Virus record (IMG/VR): IMGVR_UViG_3300015265_000001
Span: 62,001-126,000 of that record
Length of the DNA: 64,000 nt
Direction: 5' to 3' (one strand)
How positions within the stretch are numbered: position 1 is the stretch's first letter; each line of letters starts with the position of its first letter. Below, piece by piece: positions 1,905 through 20,987 of the stretch. The notes beneath the pieces were generated by a model. The model was not told the origin of the DNA and ran no database searches. It saw only the letters and a list, made by a program, of their open reading frames with translations. The position numbers were made by a program, and so were the translations under genes.

Positions 1905-2030
1905 TTATTCGCGTACACGTGCGCGCACGCGCTCCGTGCGCTAAAGAACCTATTAATATATTTATATATTAATATTCTTTATTGCTTTTAAAGCTTTTAA
2001 AAAGCAAAGAAACGCGTGCGCACGCACGAG
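1905..2030. repeat. Symmetric element: alternating purine/pyrimidine GC tracts flanking AT-rich inverted repeats
   Basis: Palindromes at 1918-1929 and 2014-2025. AT inverted repeat 1951-1960/1965-1974. Near-palindrome at 1983-2006. Confidence 0.75.
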
Positions 2031-2041
2031 GTATACAGAAG

Positions 2042-2067
2042 GGTAGAACTTTTCAAACCTAAATCAT
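2042..2067 (+). promoter_or_regulatory. Candidate early-type promoter
   Basis: ggtagaacttttcaaacctaaatcat resembles the motif upstream of phuZ, chmA, the gp68-like gene and the beta gene. Confidence 0.45.
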
Positions 2068-2127
2068 TAGTTTGTCACCTAGAGAACCATATTCTAGAAA
2101 AACGAAATTCGTAAGTGAGGAGTAGAC

Positions 2128-2670
2128 ATGACGACTATCGCGTGGGACGGCATCAAGCTGGTGAGTGATTCACAGGGCACTGCTGGGGTTATTATCCAGC
2201 CAAGTAACTTCAAGAAAATCTACGAGCCTGGAGAAGGCGAGTATTGGGATGTCTTGGGTATTCGTGTTATCGCCGCCGGCATCTCTGGCGACGGTAAAGC
2301 AATCGAGATCATCAAAGAAAAACTTCGCACCGGGATCGACCACAAGACCCGGGTTGATGAACTCGATGAAGTCGCTTTCGGCGTTTTGCTCATCACCGAA
2401 GAAGGCCAGTGCTATCGCTGGCAGATGAACAAACGCCAAGGACGACCAACTCACATGGACTTGCTCCAACTGCTCCCACCGGCAGCAGCAGGATCTGGCC
2501 AAACCTTTGCACTGAGTGTTCTGTCGATTGGCAAGAACGCTGAAACTGCTGTACGTGTAGCCTGCCGACACGATAAGTACTCGGGCGGCGATCTGCAAAT
2601 CTGGGAACTTCCACCAAAACCAGCCGTCAAGTCTAAACGACCTGTGGTTGCCGAACCTACACCCGCTTGA
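2128..2670 (+). CDS. HslV/proteasome-beta-like Ntn hydrolase, catalytic residues intact
   Basis: N-terminus MTTIAWDG..VSDSQ (Thr1 after Met removal), then KKIY, GISGD, AAAGSG and DKYSGG motifs. GAGGAG RBS. Confidence 0.8.
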   Translation: MTTIAWDGIKLVSDSQGTAGVIIQPSNFKKIYEPGEGEYWDVLGIRVIAAGISGDGKAIEIIKEKLRTGIDHKTRVDELDEVAFGVLLITEEGQCYRWQMNKRQGRPTHMDLLQLLPPAAAGSGQTFALSVLSIGKNAETAVRVACRHDKYSGGDLQIWELPPKPAVKSKRPVVAEPTPA

Positions 2671-2685
2671 TCAGGAAAACAAATC

Positions 2686-3336
2686 ATGTCCGTAGCAGCA
2701 TTCGACGGTAAACTTCTGGTCACCGACTCGGCGATCTCCACCGACGGTCAAATCAGCCCAAGTGAATTCCGCAAGATCTACACACCAGACGAAGGGGAGT
2801 ACTGGGAGATCTGCGGGGTCAAAGCAATCGCCTTTGCGTTGATCGCCGTGCCCGTGGTTTATCCACAGTTCCGTAAACTGTTGCAAGAAGGGATGACCCA
2901 TTCCTCTGACGCAATGGTGTTTGATAATACGTTCGACGCAATCGTGATTGGCGAAAATGGGGTCGCCTATCAGGTCATGATGTCTGAATCTGTCAAACCT
3001 GACAAACGTTCTGTGCTGAACATCATCCCGGCTACCGGATACCTCGCCATCGGTCCAGGCGATCAATTCGCAACAGCGGTGATGTCCATCGGTAAGTCGG
3101 CCCGTGCGGCGGTGAAGGCGGCGATCAACCTGTGCATCGAGTGCCACGGCAATCTTCAGTCGTTCGAAGTTCCACCGAAACCTGAGACACCTTCGAAACG
3201 ACCTGAACCGCAGGTTGTTGAGTTGGAGACGGTGGTGGATGACGCGCCATTTGAAGCGACCGAAGCTAAACTTGATCAGGTTGAAAAACTCCTCGAGGAA
3301 GCCGAGAAGGTTCTTGAGACCGTCAAGGGGTCGTAA
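2686..3336 (+). CDS. Divergent paralog of the Ntn hydrolase with an acidic C-terminal extension
   Basis: Aligns by eye to the upstream gene (FRKIYTPDEGEYW vs FKKIYEPGEGEYW; VMSIGKSARAAV vs VLSIGKNAETAV). It has Ser1, GPG for GSG and ECHG for YSGG. Confidence 0.75.
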   Translation: MSVAAFDGKLLVTDSAISTDGQISPSEFRKIYTPDEGEYWEICGVKAIAFALIAVPVVYPQFRKLLQEGMTHSSDAMVFDNTFDAIVIGENGVAYQVMMSESVKPDKRSVLNIIPATGYLAIGPGDQFATAVMSIGKSARAAVKAAINLCIECHGNLQSFEVPPKPETPSKRPEPQVVELETVVDDAPFEATEAKLDQVEKLLEEAEKVLETVKGS

Positions 3337-3722
3337 TTTTCTATGCTATGTGAACTCGTGAGTTTGCTCCTGCTTTGAAGATAGTTAGCCCTGGCGTACC
3401 CGCGGGAATAGTTTGGAGTCCACTACCCGCACCAGTCGATTGTCCCCCATTAACGATCGGCTGGCCTGGCAATACATCGCTGGGAAAAGCTCCACCTGCC
3501 AAAGATATTTCCATCGTGCTCAGTCCTCCTAACCGGGGTCTGAGTGCGGTGGGATTATTTCGCGTTTTTATTTTTTGTTACCGGATAGATATATTTTATA
3601 CTTGCACACGTCATCCGGTTTTTCTCGTAGCTGGGTTTACCGGATGGTGTTATTGGGGGTGGGTCCTACTGTCCTTCGGTTCGCAGGTACTTCTCACAAG
3701 TGTTTACGTCTTTTCTGAGGAC

Positions 3723-3760
3723 AGCCCCTGCGGCCTCGTTTGCAGCAGGGGTTTATTTTT
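3723..3760 (+). terminator. Rho-independent terminator
   Basis: Stem cccctgc (3725-3731) / gcagggg (3745-3751) followed by tttattttt. Confidence 0.6.
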
Positions 3761-3808
3761 CACTTGCGATAAGGATTTTGAGTGATGGAGGCAATGGGTT
3801 GAAGTCAT

Positions 3809-3834
3809 GTAAAAAGATTTCAAGCCTACATTAC
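3809..3834 (+). promoter_or_regulatory. Early-type promoter upstream of phuZ
   Basis: gtaaaaagatttcaagcctacattac. Bases 3818-3834 match 15/17 with the chmA upstream motif and end in a TATATTAC-like box. Confidence 0.65.
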
Positions 3835-3899
3835 TTGTGTGTTGGCCATAAACGGTCTAACGAATTCTTCCAACTGGTAACTCAAAGAGAACATTTCAC

Positions 3900-4898
3900 A
3901 TGAATGCAAACACTTCTGATCTGGCGTATTTCCTCTGCGGTGGTACCGGTATCAACATCGGCGTAGCGCTCAAGAAAGGCACTCACACCGACAACAACAA
4001 AAACGCGTTCTTCGTCGGCCTGGACTCCTCGGACCGCAACAGCTCCAACGACCTCTTCGAAGTCGTGCAGATGGCCGTTGCCAACGATCCTGACCAAAAG
4101 GCCAAAGGCTCGGGTAAAGTCAAGGCGACCAACTACCCGCAGGCTGAGCAGTTCATCACCCAGTTCCTGACCAAGCACAAACCTCGCGATTACAACATCA
4201 TCGTCTGCTCCACCGGCGGTGGTACTGGTTCGATGCTGGCTTTCGTTCTGGCGCGCATGCTGTTCGAACGCGACCACCTGGTCGTGCTGTGCTTCGTCAA
4301 CGACAAGACCTCCCAGGTCGAAGAAATCAACGTCGTGAACAGCTACCGTTCGTACGCGTCGCTGACCACTCCAGGTTCGCTGAACCGCGTCGTGCCGTAC
4401 ATGGAATTCGACAACACCCTGACCAACACTCGCGGTGAAGTCAACCAGATGATCATCGACAAGCTCGATGTGGCCAGCCTGTTCCTGACCAACGACAACA
4501 AGGAACAAGACCACACCGACCTGAAGAACCTGCTGAACTTCAGCAAGCACTACGGCGTTCCACCGTCCATGTCGCGTATTCGCTTCTACGACGAGAAGGG
4601 CGTTGCCGAGTTCAAAGGCAAAGTGCCGGTTGCAGTATCGTCTTTGTTCAGCAACAGCGATGCGGTCATCCCGCGTTTCAACGGCACCGTGATCCGTTCC
4701 ACCGGTGTGTTCGCCGACGGCGTCAAGCGCCCAAGCAATGCCGAAGAACTGCACATGGTCCTGGACCACGGTGAAGCTCTGAAAGAGCTGGAGAAACACA
4801 TCGAAGCCATGGAAACCCGCAAGGTCGAAACTCAAGGGACCTTCACCCAGCAGAAAGATCTCTCTGCCGGCGCGGATGCAAACGGCTTCTTCCTGTAA
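3900..4898 (+). CDS. phuZ: Phage tubulin PhuZ (phiKZ gp39-like)
   Basis: GGTGINIG N-terminal loop, tubulin signature STGGGTGS, and a short acidic/hydrophobic C-tail; 332 aa. Confidence 0.93.
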   Translation: MNANTSDLAYFLCGGTGINIGVALKKGTHTDNNKNAFFVGLDSSDRNSSNDLFEVVQMAVANDPDQKAKGSGKVKATNYPQAEQFITQFLTKHKPRDYNIIVCSTGGGTGSMLAFVLARMLFERDHLVVLCFVNDKTSQVEEINVVNSYRSYASLTTPGSLNRVVPYMEFDNTLTNTRGEVNQMIIDKLDVASLFLTNDNKEQDHTDLKNLLNFSKHYGVPPSMSRIRFYDEKGVAEFKGKVPVAVSSLFSNSDAVIPRFNGTVIRSTGVFADGVKRPSNAEELHMVLDHGEALKELEKHIEAMETRKVETQGTFTQQKDLSAGADANGFFL

Positions 4899-7716: not shown

Positions 7717-9801
7717 ATGACCGCTGCGGCCCAACATCTGTCTCCCTTCTTAGAAGAAGACTATAAACCGAACCGCGACTTGCTCAAGAACTACCACTAC
7801 ATGGCTGCCGCTTATCTGACGGCCATTTACAAGTGGGATTACAACACAGTACTGGAGCTGGTTGAAAAGGTATTCATTCCAAACCAGAATGGCTACAAGG
7901 AAGCCAAATTTAAAGTATTCAAGAAGAACAAGTACGGCGACCGTGTCCCAGACATCATGCCGGCTCGTGAGTTCTTCAAGACGGTTGAGGACAATAATTG
8001 GCACCTGTCCCCGTCGTTCGTGGCATACACGCACACCAACCAGGAACAGTCGATTAACTCGATTGGTACTGAAACCTTTATTGAATTCCGTCGCCTCTAC
8101 AAAGGCAAGATGAAGGAAGCGATTTCGATTGGCGATAAAGAAGCCACTCAAGCCTTCGACGAAATTCAGAAAGCACTGAAGATCTTTAACAACGCCCAAT
8201 CGGGTGCGTTCTCGTCGTCGGGTACTCCGCTGACGAACAAGTCGGGTCACACCACCCTGACCTCGATCTGCCGTAGCCTGACTTCTACCGCTAACCTCTT
8301 GAACGAGCGGTTGATTACAGGTAACCGGCTACTTCTCAGTTTCAACAGCTCCATGGAACTGTTTATCAGTACCCTGGCGTTTGCTAAGCGTGACAAGATT
8401 CAAGCGGTTATCGACAAGTACCAGATGAACTATGCGACACTTGACCAAGTCATGGACATGGTTAAACGTTGCTCGGCGTATTACTGGAACAACGCTACCG
8501 GCATCGCGGCTATCCGTACGTTCATGGAGAACCTGTCGCCGCTGGAGCTGACGATCATCCTGTGCACGATGGACTTGCGCGGTCTGTACACCACGAACAA
8601 AGAGCTGGTTAGACGGTTCTTCGACGAATGGTGCCAGGTCCCAGAGTTTCCTGCGTCGTTTGAAAACGTTACCACCATCAAGGCGGCTAACGATGACTAC
8701 AAGACACTCTGCACCACGAAGCTGGGTAAAGGCGCCAGTGCTGAACAATCGGCGTATCTCAACGCTTACCACGTCAGCCTGGAAGTTAAGTGGCGTGACT
8801 TCATTGAGGCGTTCCTCAAGGCAGACATTCCGCCGACCGGTATCTTCAACGTCAAAGAGTTGGTACGTGAAAACGTAGTGACTTCTGACACCGACTCCAT
8901 GATCTATTCGATCGATGCTGTTATCGACGACTTCATCACGGATCAGAAAGACGCCCTGGCGTTTAACGGTGTATTGACGTACTTCATTCGTTGTGTGGCA
9001 GTTGACCAGCACGCACGGTTGAGTACCAACATGAACGTGGCGCGGAAGTTCCGCTACCGTCTGAACATGAAGAACGAGTACCTCTTCAGTTCGTACGTGA
9101 CCACGTCTATGTCCAAGCACTATTACGCGTTGCAGTTGATGCTTGAAGGCATTATGTACGATGATCCTAAGTTGGAGCTTAAAGGCGTCCACCTCAGGGG
9201 CATCAAGATCGCACAGAAGGTTCGGGACTTTACGAACAAGCTCATGCGAGACGTACTCAATGCCATCTACAACAAACAGCAACTGGATGCACCGGCTCTG
9301 TTGAAAGGGGTTGGGGATCTGGAGCGTGCGCTCTTTGAAGAGCTGGAGAAAGGTGGTTGGAGCTGGTTGGTTAAGAACGGTATCAAAGAAGAGGCAGCCT
9401 ACAGCAATGCTGATTCGTCGATCTACTTCTACCACGAGATGTGGAAGCAAGTGTTTGCCGAGACCTACGGCGACGCCCCTGAACTGCCGTACCGCGCGTA
9501 CAAGGTAAACGTTACCACCGACAACAAGTCGAAGATGAAGCGTTACATGGAAACCCACGGGGACAATGATGTAGCCAAGCGCATGAATGCGTATATTGAA
9601 ACCAGGGGCGGGATGTCGGCGATCTACGTTCCAGCAGACATGATTGAATCCATTGGGGGTATCCCGAAAGAGATCCTACCGATTGTAGATACACGTTTGT
9701 TGATTGCTCAGAACTTCAAGTCCATTTACGCGATTCTTGAATCGTTGGGCTTGTACATCATGAACGCAAAAGTAACCCGTCTCGTATCTGACGAGCATTG
9801 A
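7717..9801 (+). CDS. Split family-B DNA polymerase, polymerase-domain subunit (phiKZ gp50-like)
   Basis: Region III-like KALKIFNNAQSGA and region I SDTDS; no exonuclease motifs; 694 aa. Confidence 0.85.
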   Translation: MTAAAQHLSPFLEEDYKPNRDLLKNYHYMAAAYLTAIYKWDYNTVLELVEKVFIPNQNGYKEAKFKVFKKNKYGDRVPDIMPAREFFKTVEDNNWHLSPSFVAYTHTNQEQSINSIGTETFIEFRRLYKGKMKEAISIGDKEATQAFDEIQKALKIFNNAQSGAFSSSGTPLTNKSGHTTLTSICRSLTSTANLLNERLITGNRLLLSFNSSMELFISTLAFAKRDKIQAVIDKYQMNYATLDQVMDMVKRCSAYYWNNATGIAAIRTFMENLSPLELTIILCTMDLRGLYTTNKELVRRFFDEWCQVPEFPASFENVTTIKAANDDYKTLCTTKLGKGASAEQSAYLNAYHVSLEVKWRDFIEAFLKADIPPTGIFNVKELVRENVVTSDTDSMIYSIDAVIDDFITDQKDALAFNGVLTYFIRCVAVDQHARLSTNMNVARKFRYRLNMKNEYLFSSYVTTSMSKHYYALQLMLEGIMYDDPKLELKGVHLRGIKIAQKVRDFTNKLMRDVLNAIYNKQQLDAPALLKGVGDLERALFEELEKGGWSWLVKNGIKEEAAYSNADSSIYFYHEMWKQVFAETYGDAPELPYRAYKVNVTTDNKSKMKRYMETHGDNDVAKRMNAYIETRGGMSAIYVPADMIESIGGIPKEILPIVDTRLLIAQNFKSIYAILESLGLYIMNAKVTRLVSDEH

Positions 9802-12000: not shown

Positions 12001-12027
12001 GGTAAGAAATTTTCAAGACTATATTAC
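12001..12027 (+). promoter_or_regulatory. Early promoter of chmA (TATATTAC)
   Basis: An exact phiKZ early consensus TATATTAC lies at 12020-12027, 84 nt before the ATG. Confidence 0.75.
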
Positions 12028-12111
12028 TCATGTAGTTGGTAGTACAGATGTTTGACATTTGTTAATACAACTTCGCTATAGCAAACTATCTTCGTAATAA
12101 GGAAAACACTC

Positions 12112-14130
12112 ATGAGTCTGAATACCGGTTCCGAAAGCACTTCCTGGAACGAGAACAAGCCTACCGAAAACGCCAACCAGGCTCCAGGTGCTACCGGCAC
12201 CATGGCTCCGCTGGATGGTCTGGCCGGCCTGCTGCGTCTTCCTTCGATGACCTCCGACAACCGCAACCTGAAGGAAGTGGCCGAGACCATCGAGAAACTC
12301 GAAGGCATTTACGAGAATGCCAAGAAATCCACCACCAACGAGCTGCAACGCAAAATCGTTCCGACCGTTGAAATGCTGACCCCGTCCATCTCGGCTCAAC
12401 TGCCGGGCGTCGGTCTGTACGTTGTCTTCGACGGCACCATGTACGTAATGGCCGCGCTGTTCTACAACCGCACGCTGAGCATCGGCGTCGAGCGCATCAC
12501 CGTCAACGCCAACAACATCATGCAGCAAATGTCGGCGCCGCTGACCCCGGCTCAGTACCCGAACAACGTGTTCCTGGAAAAGCTGACCTCCCACTACACC
12601 AAAGTGGCCGAAGCTCAGGGCGTGAAGAACGTCAGCGTCATCAACATGATCGTCGTCGACCTGGAAATGCTGCACCACCCAGAAGCCGGCGATCCGAAAG
12701 ACTGGGCTCACCGTCAGGCGAACTACATCGCCTCCGAGTGGGAAGAAGCGATCATGGTCAAGACCGTTCGCGAAATCGTGGCCAAGGGTTACAACATCCC
12801 GGCTCCGTTCGCTACTCCTGACCAGCCATACGGCAAAGACGGCTGCGCCGAAGCCCGCGTTAACGCAATCAGCTTCCGCGCCAGCAAGGCCGGCACCCTG
12901 ACTCCTGACAACATGGAAGTGATCGTTTCGACGATCAACAACAACAACCAGAGCTCCGGCAACTTCCAGGCGAACTCGAAAGAGATCATCCGGGTTACCG
13001 CTGCGGTCAGCCTGAACGGCGTGTCGTGGGAAGATCACCAGCGCTTCATGATGTCGCACCGCTCGCAAGAGCAAATGAACGCGCTGCAACAGTTCCTCGG
13101 CAACTCCATGGGCATGGGTGTCTACCCGTCGGGCTTCAAGCCACTGCGTCCTGTGATCACCGTCGGCACCGTTCAGGCCGGCGAGCAACTCTGCAACAAC
13201 GGCGGTCTGTTCCCGTTCTTCACCGGTCTGTACTCGCTGATGGCGACCAACAACCAGTACGTCTGGTCCGAAGCTCTGCGCCGTCACAGCGTTGGTGCTC
13301 GCGGTAACCTGGCCGACCTGGAAACTCGTGTCGATCAAATGGTCGGTCAGATCCCTGGTGGCTTCCAGAGCCCAGCGCGTATCCGTCTCGACGAGAAGAA
13401 AATGTCGGACACCGAGCTGGTCAACAACTGGATCCGTCAGAACGTTTCGCCGCACGCAACCTTCCAGATCAACCTGATCCCGGCCGGTCCAAATGCGTCG
13501 ATCAACAACTTCTTCTTCCAGCTGGCCAAACAAGGTCAGAACGCGGCGGAAATCAAAGTTGTTATCGCTCTGATCGATGCCATGACCAAAGGCGGCATGT
13601 CCGAAGCCATCCGCGACAACATCAAAGCTGGCACTGGCTGGGTACCGTCCAAACCGGTACTGATCCCAACCGGCATGATCGCTGTCAACGGCCTGGCCGA
13701 GTACGCCGGCAAGAAGTTCAACACCCAGGAACTGGACGAGATGATGATCTCGCACATCAAGGGCCCGAAAGGTCAACTCGCAGCCGAAAGCCTGCTGTCG
13801 ACCATGTACGGCACCGTCCCGGGCGAAGAGTTCAAGCAACGTGCTCAGAAGCTGCGCGTGGAAACCGGTTCGTCGCTGTTCGACGGTCAGGTTCACATCA
13901 ACGGCTGGGCTCAGCCTCACATCTGGGCGCCTGACTTCATGGCCACCATGTCGAAAGCCATGGACTCCATCGGTCAGCTGAACGTTGCCAACAACCTGGG
14001 CAGCTGGCGCAACACCAGCCTGGCTTCGACGCCTGGCATCGGTCTGGCGACTCTGGTTGGTGCTGGTTCGAACAACGCCACCGGCAACGGTCTGGGCGTG
14101 GCGTACAGCATGAACATGCCGTTCATGTAA
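12112..14130 (+). CDS. chmA: Chimallin, major phage nuclear shell protein (phiKZ gp54 / 201phi2-1 gp105-like)
   Basis: 672 aa with a disordered N-tail and extreme high-expression codon bias. Canonical position between the gp52-like gene and the nvRNAP beta' gene. The sequence resembles recalled chimallins. Confidence 0.88.
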   Translation: MSLNTGSESTSWNENKPTENANQAPGATGTMAPLDGLAGLLRLPSMTSDNRNLKEVAETIEKLEGIYENAKKSTTNELQRKIVPTVEMLTPSISAQLPGVGLYVVFDGTMYVMAALFYNRTLSIGVERITVNANNIMQQMSAPLTPAQYPNNVFLEKLTSHYTKVAEAQGVKNVSVINMIVVDLEMLHHPEAGDPKDWAHRQANYIASEWEEAIMVKTVREIVAKGYNIPAPFATPDQPYGKDGCAEARVNAISFRASKAGTLTPDNMEVIVSTINNNNQSSGNFQANSKEIIRVTAAVSLNGVSWEDHQRFMMSHRSQEQMNALQQFLGNSMGMGVYPSGFKPLRPVITVGTVQAGEQLCNNGGLFPFFTGLYSLMATNNQYVWSEALRRHSVGARGNLADLETRVDQMVGQIPGGFQSPARIRLDEKKMSDTELVNNWIRQNVSPHATFQINLIPAGPNASINNFFFQLAKQGQNAAEIKVVIALIDAMTKGGMSEAIRDNIKAGTGWVPSKPVLIPTGMIAVNGLAEYAGKKFNTQELDEMMISHIKGPKGQLAAESLLSTMYGTVPGEEFKQRAQKLRVETGSSLFDGQVHINGWAQPHIWAPDFMATMSKAMDSIGQLNVANNLGSWRNTSLASTPGIGLATLVGAGSNNATGNGLGVAYSMNMPFM

Positions 14131-20922: not shown

Positions 20923-20949
20923 GGTAAAAAGATTTAAAACCTACATTAT
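20923..20949 (+). promoter_or_regulatory. Early-type promoter upstream of the gp68-like gene
   Basis: ggtaaaaagatttaaaacctacattat, nearly identical to the phuZ upstream motif. Confidence 0.6.
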
Positions 20950-20987
20950 CCCCTTGTAGACAATAAAACTGTTTGGAGTTAAGTAAC

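What the first reader, a model, noticed from the sequence alone, without database searches (positions are those of the whole stretch)
2128..3336. Tandem active plus degenerate proteasome-beta/HslV-like pair: a possible phage heteromeric mini-proteasome
Seen: two adjacent, clearly paralogous Ntn-fold ORFs. Copy 1 keeps the HslV/20S-beta set (Thr1, SD, K in KKIY, GxSGD, GSG, DxxSGG). Copy 2 has Ser1, ALIAV, GPG and ECHG at those positions, and gains an acidic, probably coiled-coil tail of about 40 aa. Known: 20S proteasomes pair catalytic beta with non-catalytic alpha subunits of the same fold, while HslV is homomeric and needs HslU; no AAA+ partner is in this window. Inference: a duplicated catalytic/regulatory pair, expressed early (it shares the promoter motif of phuZ and chmA), that could degrade host defence proteins or mature phage proteins.
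Basis: partly seen in the sequence, partly recalled or inferred. Interest (0 to 1): 0.72.

Follow-up and report, generated by a model that had tools for sequence, protein, structure and literature searches.

The report
Paired HslV-like peptidases in jumbo phage
A nucleus-forming jumbo phage from soil carries two adjacent, co-transcribed copies of a bacterial-proteasome-like (HslV-type) peptidase, one with the full catalytic set and one with a weakened but actively conserved active site and an acidic tail. They probably work as a mixed particle with no phage-encoded ATPase, but what that particle degrades is unknown.

Summary
ORFs 2128-2670 (180 aa) and 2686-3336 (216 aa) are paralogues (36% identity, E 2e-34). 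Both belong to phage family PHROG 1040 and model with high confidence as the HslV/20S-beta Ntn fold (Z 17 to HslV, residue 2 on Thr1).

Copy 1 has every catalytic residue of a family in which those residues are 85-97% invariant. Copy 2 keeps Ser1, Asp17 and Lys33 but has lost the second shell (Ser129 to Pro, Gly47 to Ala, Gly170 to His).

Copy 2 is not a pseudogene. Core dN/dS is 0.02-0.28, like copy 1, and Ser1 is kept across a codon-family switch.

The pair lies 14-16 nt apart behind an early-type promoter motif shared with phuZ, chimallin and a GroEL-like gene. It recurs in at least 13 related metagenomic loci. Relatives hold one copy (phage EL), two canonical copies, or three.

No AAA+ gene exists in the complete 227-kb genome, and the family lacks HslV's second apical helix. 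A complex prediction supports copy1-copy2 contact (0.69 against a best control of 0.00), but paralogues of a ring former are expected to pass.

The "active plus alpha-like dead subunit" reading is only partly supported: copy 2 may be weakly active. This is a new variant of a known kind, and targets are unknown. A conserved structured RNA lies just downstream.

The parts
2052..2070 (+). Early-type phage promoter motif (TTCAAACCTAAATCATTAG) 58 nt upstream of the copy 1 start
   Evidence: Exact pattern match here and upstream of phuZ, with 0 expected by chance. About 14 sites with 2 or fewer mismatches occur genome-wide, all on the + strand, including upstream of chimallin and a GroEL-like gene. 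It is conserved upstream of copy 1 in L013, L005, L017 and L007. It equals the annotated 'putative phage promoter' of phage EL. The only bioinformatically conserved motif in RNAP-encoding jumbo phages has proved to be the early vRNAP promoter wherever tested (PMC7598289).
2079..2097 (+). Conserved palindrome CTAGA-N9-TCTAG in the 5' leader of the operon
   Evidence: Present with the same arms in window, L013, L005, L017, L007 and L018. Function not tested.
2128..2670 (+). Copy 1: 180-aa HslV-type Ntn threonine peptidase with a complete catalytic set (Thr2, Asp14, Lys30, Gly54, Ser123, Asp149, Ser152, Gly153)
   Evidence: PHROG 1040, E 2e-30. AF2 pLDDT 97.2. VIA Z 17.1 to E. coli HslV, rmsd 2.3 A over 143 aa, with residue 2 on Thr1. 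hhalign to E. coli HslV gives 97.3%, E 2.5e-11. A profile against the PDB aligns the TT..D..K, GSG and DxxSGG motifs with 20S beta5. Residue tally. Core dN/dS 0.07-0.23.
2611..2643 (+). Conserved proline-rich C-terminal motif PPKPAVKSKRP of copy 1
   Evidence: The motif P-P-x-P-x-x-x-S-x-R-P follows the last strand in both copies, in EL gp015 and in most jumbo-phage members. It is modelled with pLDDT above 90. It is absent from the FishSpeaker pair and from L011 copy 2, and the 140-162-aa proteins of small contigs end before it.
2671..2685 (+). 15-nt spacer with an AGGAAA ribosome-binding site between copy 1 and copy 2
   Evidence: The spacer is 14-16 nt with a purine-rich site in all 8 clade loci. 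The genes abut (0 nt) or overlap (4 nt) in L011 and L012. No terminator-like site on the + strand lies between them.
2686..3336 (+). Copy 2: 216-aa paralogue with Ser2, Asp14 and Lys30 kept. Gly54 to Ala, Ser129-equivalent to Pro124, Asp166-equivalent to Cys150, Ser169-equivalent to Cys153, Gly170-equivalent to His154
   Evidence: PHROG 1040, E 5.5e-17. AF2 pLDDT 93.5. VIA Z 17.0 to HslV with residue 2 on Thr1. Orthologues P0001-P0009 all start MS. Core dN/dS 0.02-0.28. Ser1 codons are TCC, TCT and AGC. The core is acidic (pI 4.7-5.7) against pI 6.1-8.9 for copy 1.
3172..3204 (+). Conserved proline-rich motif PPKPETPSKRP of copy 2
3205..3333 (+). Variable acidic C-terminal tail of copy 2 (43 aa, net charge -9) ending in an amphipathic helix (residues 194-215, nt 3265-3330)
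   Evidence: Helix predicted, pLDDT 87-96 for the last 16 residues. Tails of orthologues differ in length (22-43 aa) and sequence, and all are acidic. In contigs of relatives this stretch is replaced by other letters of a different length (joints 3143/3176/3194 to 3333/3346).
3340..3790 (+). Conserved structured RNA region downstream of the pair. It may be the operon's 3'UTR with a terminator-like hairpin and T-run at about 3519-3580, followed by a second element that ends in a hairpin and T-run at about 3728-3775
   Evidence: 81% mean column identity across 8 loci, higher than the flanking coding sequence. 69 predicted pairs, 20 with compensatory changes. The + strand consensus fold has z -10.4 and -9.6, against -1.2 and -4.1 on the - strand. 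No Rfam family or tRNA matched. Whether it belongs functionally to the peptidase operon is unknown.
3819..3837 (+). Second copy of the early-type promoter motif, upstream of phuZ (3900-4898)
   Evidence: phrog_4733, tubulin PhuZ, E 3.6e-75.

Best explanation
The two genes form an early-expressed operon encoding two paralogous subunits of an HslV-type, self-compartmentalising Ntn peptidase.

Shown. Both proteins have the HslV/20S-beta fold. Copy 1 carries the complete Thr1-Lys33-Asp17 triad, the Ser129/Asp166/Ser169 second shell and the Gly47 turn. Copy 2 keeps Ser1-Lys33-Asp17 but has lost Ser129, Gly47 and Gly170. Copy 2 is held by purifying selection as strong as that on copy 1. The genes are 15 nt apart behind one promoter motif of the class that also precedes phuZ, chimallin and a GroEL-like gene. 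The pair is conserved in a clade of about 215-230-kb EL-like phages. The genome has no AAA+ gene.

Inferred. After the initiator Met is removed, copy 1 is the efficient protease. Copy 2 is a catalytically attenuated (perhaps silent) partner that co-assembles with it. The only arrangement the predictor returned stacks a copy 1 arc on a copy 2 arc through the H3/H4 face, which would give a double ring with one strong and one weak ring. The acidic, exchangeable helical tails of copy 2 would project from the particle as docking or gating modules.

The family lacks the second apical helix that in HslV carries the HslU-tail pocket residue L88. The particle is therefore more likely to be ATPase-independent (like BPH or Anbu), or served by an unrelated factor, than a client of host HslU.

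Its substrates are not indicated by any data. They could be host or phage proteins early in infection.
For: Paralogy. Family. Fold. Motif-level alignment to 20S beta5 and HslV.

Family-wide invariance of catalytic positions (n=163): T1 140, D17 157, K33 151, G47 152, S/T129 150, D166 141, S/T169 143, G170 140. The copy 2 clade is variable at exactly the second-shell positions and invariant at S1, D17 and K33.

Purifying selection and the Ser codon switch.

Conserved tandem arrangement and spacing.

The tree places a fully canonical second copy (L009_2) as sister to the Ser1 clade, with a long stem of 0.55.

Promoter class.

No AAA+ gene. H2 deletion.

Predicted copy1-copy2 interface: ipSAE 0.69 against a best control of 0.00. 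That mark was reached by 58 of 80 solved complexes and 2 of 110 mismatched pairs.

Systematic charge difference between the cores.

Independent recurrence of a Thr1 plus Ser1 pair in another lineage (L040, with Lys33 to Arg) and in phage FishSpeaker.
Against: No experiment exists for any member of this phage family. The complex score is expected for paralogues of a ring-forming family. It cannot separate hetero- from homo-oligomers, it used cores truncated at residue 166, and it assumed 3+3 chains.

Ser1 can be a competent nucleophile (PMC4792962), so 'attenuated' is a judgement from Ser129 to Pro and the glycine losses, not a measurement. Sister lineages keep two or three fully canonical copies, so co-assembly of an inactive subunit is not needed to explain tandem copies.

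Independence from host HslU rests on one deleted helix and was not tested. Ring size (6 or 7) is unknown.
Confidence: 0.5

Rival explanations
1. Both copies are active peptidases that have sub-functionalised. Copy 2 is a Ser-nucleophile variant with a different specificity or regulation. It acts either in its own homo-oligomer or as a second kind of active site in a mixed particle, as beta1, beta2 and beta5 do in the 20S.
For: Ser1, Asp17 and Lys33 are invariant in every copy 2 orthologue, and Ser is kept across TCC/TCT/AGC codons. Yeast beta5-T1S keeps 55-60% activity and D166N keeps about 40% (PMC4792962). Cys at the Asp166 column is the state of E. coli HslV and of Thr1 family members such as P0037. 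The L007/L018 sub-branch of copy 2 still has Ser/Thr at positions 129 and 169. Sister phages carry two or three canonical copies.
Against: In the window's sub-branch Ser129 is Pro or Asp, at a position that is Ser/Thr in 150 of 163 family representatives. Gly47 is Ala and Gly170 is His. These positions vary among copy 2 orthologues, as expected when catalytic constraint is relaxed. The stem of the Ser1 clade is long (0.55).
Confidence: 0.3
2. Copy 2 has left proteolysis altogether and works apart from copy 1 as a binding protein. For example, it could be a decoy ring that titrates a host factor (HslU or a defence protein), using the old substrate cleft and its acidic tail.
For: There is strong purifying selection together with a relaxed second shell. 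The acidic core and the rapidly exchanged acidic tail suggest an evolving interaction surface.
Against: Copy 2 is never found without copy 1 immediately upstream. The spacer is fixed at 14-16 nt in all 8 aligned clade loci, and the gene coordinates agree in the 7 IMG/VR loci. The predicted contact with copy 1 uses the canonical ring-ring face, which is conserved. The family lacks the HslV helix that bears the HslU-tail pocket residue.
Confidence: 0.12
3. Copy 2 is a decaying duplicate with no function.
For: It has lost several residues that are near-invariant in the family.
Against: The reading frame is intact in all 15 loci translated (the window, seven loci, seven). In the eight with codon alignments, core dN/dS is 0.02-0.28 at dS 0.3-1.0, equal to copy 1. 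Ser1, Asp17 and Lys33 are invariant. The model has pLDDT 93.5.
Confidence: 0.02

Closest known systems
Bacterial HslV (ClpQ), peptidase component of HslVU (MEROPS T1B), e.g. E. coli b3932
   Same: Best structural match for both copies: Z 17, rmsd 2.0-2.3 A over about 143 aa. hhalign 97.3%. The mature N-terminus is made by Met removal alone, with no propeptide. Size is about 175 aa. Thr1, Asp17, Lys33 and the GSG motif are present.
   Different: No Pfam or NCBIfam model reaches its cut-off. About 13 residues are missing where HslV has apical helix H2, which bears L88. There is an 8-aa family insert, P-x-E-G-E-Y-W, and a proline-rich C-terminal motif. No HslU gene is adjacent or anywhere in the genome. 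There are two diverged paralogues instead of one gene.
Eukaryotic 20S proteasome beta ring with active (beta1, 2, 5) and inactive (beta3, 4, 6, 7) paralogues
   Same: Paralogous Ntn subunits of one fold, some fully catalytic and some with a degraded active site, kept by selection because they are presumably built into one particle. The second triad (Ser129/Asp166) is the part lost in copy 2.
   Different: Only two paralogues. No alpha-type subunit: neither copy has the N-terminal extension. No propeptide. The heteromer is predicted, not shown. Copy 2 keeps a potential Ser nucleophile, whereas, from my own knowledge and not checked here, the inactive eukaryotic beta subunits lack one.
Partner-less bacterial proteasome homologues BPH and Anbu
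   Same: BPH (5ovt/5ovs) scores Z 16.0-16.1 with both models. Like them, the phage proteins have no cognate AAA+ gene. That BPH and Anbu lack one is from my own knowledge of the literature and was not checked here.
   Different: Z is no higher than for HslV or 20S beta, so no specific relationship is shown. The phage proteins are shorter and come as a diverged pair.
PHROG 1040 'peptidase HslV family' of phages, e.g. Pseudomonas phage EL gp015
   Same: Same family (E 2e-30 and 5.5e-17). In EL the gene sits at the same place: DUF7484 homologue, HslV-like gene, about 500-nt gap, promoter, PhuZ, DNA polymerase. EL gp015 is 36-39% identical and has the same C-terminal motif.
   Different: EL and nearly all of the 108 isolate records have a single copy at that place. 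The window's clade has a Thr1 copy plus a Ser1 copy with a tail. No member has been studied experimentally. The held literature has only annotation-level mentions.

Membership tests
Proteasome-beta/HslV superfamily (Ntn hydrolase, MEROPS family T1) | Four-layer alpha-beta-beta-alpha Ntn fold with the nucleophile at the first residue of the mature chain | tested here: met
   AF2 pLDDT 97.2 and 93.5. Foldseek probability 1.00 to 20S beta and HslV. VIA Z 15-17, with model residue 2 aligned to residue 1 of HslV and 20S beta.
Proteasome-beta/HslV superfamily (Ntn hydrolase, MEROPS family T1) | Catalytic triad Thr1-Lys33-Asp17 | tested here: met
   Copy 1 has Thr2, Lys30 and Asp14. Copy 2 has Ser in place of Thr, with Lys and Asp kept. 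So this feature is met for copy 1 and met only with a Ser substitution for copy 2.
Proteasome-beta/HslV superfamily (Ntn hydrolase, MEROPS family T1) | Second shell Ser129 (GSG), Asp166/Ser169 (DxxSGG) and the Gly47 turn | tested here: inconclusive
   Copy 1 has all of them. Copy 2 has Pro124, Cys150, Cys153, His154 and Ala54. Cys at the 166 column is also the HslV state, so only Ser129, Gly47 and Gly170 count as losses.
Pfam PF00227 Proteasome / NCBIfam proteasome and HslV models | Score above the curated cut-off | tested here: not met
   No Pfam hit at E<=1 for copy 1, and none relevant for copy 2. The best NCBIfam hit is 15.3 bits against a cut-off of 224.
HslVU system | Cognate HslU (AAA+ / AAA_2) unfoldase encoded with the peptidase | tested here: not met
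   PF00004 and PF07724 are absent from the complete genome, while the controls matched in 14 of 14 genomes. No homologue of the HslU-like RAY gp116 was found. Use of the host's HslU is not testable here.
HslVU system | Apical helix H2 region that forms the HslU C-tail pocket (L88 region) | tested here: not met
   hhalign puts about 13 gap positions in copy 1 opposite HslV residues of about 70-90. The model has a single helix (56-68) between strands 45-54 and 82-90. That this region binds HslU tails is from my own knowledge.
HslVU system | Dodecamer of two stacked hexameric rings | not testable with these tools
   Only a 3+3-chain prediction of truncated cores was run. Its contacts use H3/H4 and the 18-25 loop. 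Ring size was not determined.
   Copy 2 begins M-S at the same alignment column as copy 1 and HslV Thr1. Its extension is C-terminal.
PHROG 1040 (phage 'peptidase HslV family') | Significant match to the family profile over the whole domain | tested here: met
   E 2.1e-30 (residues 1-169) and 5.5e-17 (residues 1-181).

The most novel reading that the evidence does not exclude
EL-like nucleus-forming phages build an ATPase-independent, hetero-oligomeric mini-proteasome: one ring of fully active Thr1 subunits stacked on one ring of attenuated Ser1 subunits. The exchangeable acidic helical tails of the Ser1 subunits recruit or gate substrates. The particle is made from the earliest (virion-RNAP) promoters together with the nuclear shell, PhuZ and the phage chaperonin, and it serves host take-over or counter-defence. 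The repeated, independent appearance of Thr1 plus Ser1 tandem pairs (window clade, L040, FishSpeaker) would then replay in miniature the active/inactive beta-subunit divergence of the eukaryotic 20S.
Probability: 0.22. Interest if true: 0.78.

Novelty: new variant of a known kind. Interest (0 to 1): 0.52.

Why it matters
Phage HslV-like genes are annotated in hundreds of genomes, but none has been studied, and they lack the ATPase that HslV needs. This clade offers a natural series for studying how a homomeric Ntn peptidase becomes a heteromer with unequal active sites: one copy in EL, two canonical copies, and one canonical copy plus a Ser1 copy. It also poses the question of what a partner-less proteasome homologue does in the first minutes of a nucleus-forming phage infection. 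A cultured phage with such a pair, Shewanella phage FishSpeaker, makes the question experimentally tractable.

Tried and rejected
1. I suspected that RAY gp116, the nuclear 'HslVU family' protein of Prichard et al. (bioRxiv 10.1101/2023.02.24.529968), was a homologue. It is a 569-aa HslU-like ATPase, not HslV-like, and it has no counterpart in this genome. The two 179-aa ORFs after it (gp117, gp118) are unrelated to the family.

2. Single-sequence searches of the PDB, Pfam and NCBIfam gave nothing significant. Only profiles and structure show the relationship.

3. The CxxC motif (C-I-E-C) of copy 2 looked like a new redox or metal site. However, Cys at these two columns also occurs in canonical Thr1 members and in E. 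coli HslV, so I dropped the idea.

4. Megablast against isolate phages found nothing. The phage is known only from metagenomes.

5. Expression evidence from public runs failed. The two 'RNA' runs look like DNA and hold only relatives.

6. A literature search for the phiKZ early promoter sequence that I remembered returned only irrelevant papers. I rely instead on the review PMC7598289.

7. Rfam and ARAGORN found nothing in the conserved downstream region.

8. I did not run the count of structure pairs or build a covariance model for the RNA. The first needs a long typed structure string, and a model of this length exceeds the calibration limit.
Full report
**1. The observation**

The window is bases 62,001-126,000 of a 226,985-bp IMG/VR virus record with direct terminal repeats, rated 100% complete. 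ORFs 2128-2670 (180 aa, copy 1) and 2686-3336 (216 aa, copy 2) lie on the + strand. They sit between a DUF7484 gene (658-1506, - strand) and phuZ (3900-4898), with a DNA polymerase gene at 7717.

The two proteins are 36% identical over 175 residues (E 2e-34). They are the only copies in the genome.

**2. The family**

Neither protein reaches any Pfam or NCBIfam cut-off, and single-sequence searches of the PDB are empty. Both match PHROG 1040, 'peptidase HslV family' (E 2e-30 and 5.5e-17).

An exhaustive phmmer search finds 542 cluster representatives at E<=1e-3. Nearly all of them align from residue 1. A profile of 109 members hits 20S beta5/beta8 (E 3e-8) and HslV (E 3e-6) in the PDB. It aligns TT..D..K with Thr1/Asp17/Lys33, GSG with Ser129, and DxxSGG with Asp166/Ser169/Gly170. 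hhalign against E. coli HslV gives 97.3% probability, E 2.5e-11.

AlphaFold2 models are confident, with pLDDT 97.2 for copy 1 and 93.5 for copy 2. Both superpose best on HslV: Z 17, rmsd 2.0-2.3 A over about 143 residues, with model residue 2 on Thr1. BPH and 20S beta follow at Z 16. The Ntn fold is therefore established for both copies.

The family differs from HslV in three ways:
- About 13 residues are missing where HslV has its second apical helix. The model has a single helix, 56-68.
- There is an 8-residue insert, P-x-E-G-E-Y-W.
- In most jumbo-phage members a proline-rich motif (PPKPETPSKRP) follows the last strand. It is modelled with pLDDT above 90.

**3. The active sites**

Catalytic positions are close to invariant across 163 family proteins:

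| Position | Count of 163 |
|---|---|
| Thr1 | 140 |
| Asp17 | 157 |
| Lys33 | 151 |
| Gly47 | 152 |
| Ser/Thr129 | 150 |
| Gly130 | 159 |
| Asp166 | 141 |
| Ser/Thr169 | 143 |
| Gly170 | 140 |

Copy 1 and its seven orthologues have all of these residues.

Copy 2 and its orthologues always have Ser1, Asp17 and Lys33, but they vary at the second shell:
- Gly47 is A, G or S.
- Ser129 is P, D, T or S.
- Asp166 is C or N.
- Ser169 is C, S or T.
- Gly170 is H, G, A or D.

Not all of these changes are losses. E. coli HslV itself has Cys and Thr at the 166 and 169 columns. Canonical Thr1 members such as P0037 carry Cys at both. What remains for the window's copy 2 is Thr1 to Ser, Ser129 to Pro, Gly47 to Ala and Gly170 to His.

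Huber et al. (PMC4792962) provide the yardstick:
- Yeast beta5-T1S keeps 55-60% of its activity.
- D166N impairs activity by about 60%.
- Ser129 and Asp166 form a second triad that is needed for efficient proteolysis.

Copy 2 is therefore best described as attenuated. It is possibly silent, but it is not demonstrably dead.

**4. Selection**

I made codon alignments of eight loci and computed Nei-Gojobori estimates. Where dS is 0.3-1.0, core dN/dS is 0.02-0.28 for copy 2 and 0.07-0.23 for copy 1.

Ser1 of copy 2 is encoded by TCC, TCT or AGC. The sister sequences L007 and L018 use different codon families, so Ser has been held, or regained, through a two-step change. The pseudogene reading is refuted.

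Both genes have two- to three-fold higher dS than the adjacent phuZ and DUF7484 genes. The nearest relative (L016) differs mainly in the copy 2 tail, which points to recombination at this spot.

**5. Distribution and history**

Phage EL has the same neighbourhood but only one copy: gp014 (DUF7484 homologue), gp015 (HslV-like), a gap of about 500 nt, the promoter, then PhuZ.

tblastn finds the family in 108 isolate phage records, all below 60% identity. These include SPN3US-like, Erwinia, Klebsiella, Aeromonas and Vibrio phages and some 40-50-kb phages. All 108 have a single place with the copy 1 query. Shewanella phage FishSpeaker is the one listed record with two places with the copy 2 query. 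It has a tandem pair upstream of PhuZ, with a Ser1 copy and a Thr1 copy.

Metagenomic relatives of 210-230 kb show a series:

| Arrangement | Loci |
|---|---|
| Thr1 plus Ser1, as in the window | L005/6, L007/8, L013, L016, L017, L018; IMG/VR L027-L033 |
| Two canonical Thr1 copies | L009, L011, L012, L034 |
| Three canonical copies | L038/39 |
| Independent Thr1 plus Ser1/Arg33 pair | L040 |
| Single copy | L035, L036, EL |

About 35 small (10-50 kb) viral contigs have one short MTT copy of 140-189 aa.

In the tree the copy 1 clade (support 99) and the Ser1 clade (support 100, stem length 0.55) are separate. The fully canonical second copy of L009 is sister to the Ser1 clade (support 94). The L011, L012 and FishSpeaker pairs branch elsewhere. 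Duplication therefore came before attenuation, and tandem duplication has happened several times.

The family is an accessory gene in Chimalliviridae, not a core gene.

**6. Expression**

The 19-nt motif at 2052-2070 recurs at 3819-3837 before phuZ, with 0 expected by chance. Allowing up to 2 mismatches, about 14 sites occur genome-wide, all on the + strand. They include sites upstream of chimallin (window 12112-14130, phrog_4795) and a GroEL-like chaperonin.

The motif equals the annotated promoter of EL and is conserved upstream of copy 1 in the orthologous loci. According to PMC7598289, the one motif that can be found bioinformatically in RNAP-encoding jumbo phages has proved to be the early, virion-RNAP promoter wherever transcripts were profiled. 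Early expression is thus a reasonable inference, not a measurement.

The two genes are 14-16 nt apart with a ribosome-binding site in all clade members, and they abut or overlap in L011 and L012. Co-transcription is therefore very likely.

**7. Partner**

The complete genome has no PF00004 or PF07724 match, while the controls matched in 14 of 14 genomes. It also has no homologue of the HslU-like RAY gp116. Because the H2 region is deleted, I consider dependence on host HslU less likely than independence. This was not tested.

**8. Assembly**

One prediction was run, with three truncated cores (residues 1-166) of each copy. It gave ipSAE 0.69 against a best control of 0.00. That mark was reached by 58 of 80 solved complexes and by 2 of 110 mismatched pairs.

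All copy1-copy2 contacts use helices H3/H4 (126-151) and the 18-25 loop. From my own knowledge, this is the face that joins the two rings in HslV and the 20S. The model therefore stacks a copy 1 arc on a copy 2 arc.

The tool itself warns that relatives of known complexes pass from memory, so this supports a heteromer but does not show one. The cores differ systematically in charge: pI 6.1-8.9 for copy 1 against 4.7-5.7 for copy 2. Copy 2 tails are always acidic but are exchanged between lineages.

**9. Verdict**

- **Best explanation (0.5):** an early operon for a two-subunit HslV-type peptidase in which copy 1 does the cutting. Copy 2 is an attenuated, tail-bearing partner.
- **Rival A (0.3):** both copies are active and have sub-functionalised.
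- **Rival B (0.12):** copy 2 works apart from copy 1 as a binding protein or decoy.
- **Rival C (0.02):** copy 2 is a decaying duplicate. The selection analysis refutes this.

The alpha/beta analogy fails, because copy 2 has no N-terminal extension. The better analogy is the active and inactive beta paralogues of the eukaryotic 20S. Substrates are unknown, and the suggestion that the particle degrades host defence proteins has no evidence behind it.

This is a new variant of a known kind.

**10. Noticed in passing**

The 563-nt stretch between copy 2 and phuZ is more conserved than the genes around it, at 81% column identity over 8 loci.
- It has 1-nt indels that rule out a conserved ORF.
- It has 69 predicted base pairs, 20 of them with compensatory changes.
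- It folds far better on the + strand. For 3340-3585, z is -10.4 on the + strand and -1.2 on the - strand. For 3586-3790, z is -9.6 and -4.1.
- It matches no Rfam family and no tRNA.
- It is unique in the genome and absent from EL, L011, L012 and FishSpeaker.

It looks like one or two structured RNAs, either a 3'UTR element of the peptidase operon or small RNA genes. It deserves its own follow-up.

Noticed in passing
window 3340-3790 (+ strand): The 'intergenic' stretch between copy 2 and phuZ is more conserved than the flanking genes (81% column identity in 8 loci). It has 69 predicted pairs, 20 of them compensatory, and folds much better on the + strand (z -10.4 and -9.6, against -1.2 and -4.1 on the - strand). 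It contains two hairpin-plus-T-run sites (about 3519-3580 and about 3728-3775) and an invariant loop, TATATTTTATACTTGCACACGTC, at about 3590-3615. There is no Rfam or tRNA match. It is unique in the genome and absent from EL, L011, L012 and FishSpeaker. It is probably one or two undescribed structured RNAs.
   Followed up: partly
window 2079-2097: A palindrome, CTAGA-N9-TCTAG, lies in the 5' leader of the peptidase operon. It is conserved in all clade members, including L018, which lacks the canonical promoter motif at that spot.
   Followed up: no
window 12012-12030 and 20934-20950; G000:C1 15380, 39426, 44456, 133339, 166203, 174411, 176541, 191295, 198982, 221688: There is a genome-wide family of about 14 promoter-like sites with consensus TTTTCAAACCTAyATTAyT, all on the + strand. 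They lie upstream of chimallin (window 12112-14130), a GroEL-like chaperonin (G000 199049-200737) and several genes of unknown function. This is probably the early vRNAP promoter set.
   Followed up: partly
G000:C1:199049-200737 (outside the window): The phage encodes a 562-aa GroEL-like chaperonin (phrog_5725, E 5e-119) behind the same promoter motif as the peptidase pair. From my own recollection phage EL also encodes a chaperonin, which I did not check here. A chaperonin and peptidase pairing in protein quality control is an untested idea.
   Followed up: no
window 1905-2035: GC-rich palindromic arms (CGTGCGCGCACG at 1918-1929, CGCGTGCGCACG at 2013-2024) flank an 83-nt AT-rich core full of short palindromes, just upstream of the operon promoter. 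Contigs of relatives break here.
   Followed up: no
window 2128-3336 compared with 658-1506 and 3900-4898: Both peptidase genes have synonymous divergence two to three times that of the neighbouring phuZ and DUF7484 genes. Against the nearest relative (L016), dS is 0.07 for copy 1 and 0.31 for copy 2, and the tail is replaced. The locus looks like a recombination mosaic.
   Followed up: partly
L038/L039 2001-4044; L040 2001-3365; L002 4396-5600: Other jumbo phages show three tandem canonical copies (L038/39), an independent Thr1 plus Ser1/Arg33 pair (L040), and a Ser1 plus Thr1 pair in which both copies have lost the GSG serine (cultured Shewanella phage FishSpeaker). Some family representatives start with Gly1 (P0048, P0053, P0057, P0063, P0079).
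   Followed up: partly
L015 4353-6062 (Erwinia phage RAY gp116): The nuclear 'HslVU family' protein of phage RAY is an HslU-like ATPase of 569 aa without an adjacent HslV-like gene. This is the mirror image of the present phage, which has HslV-like genes but no ATPase.
   Followed up: yes
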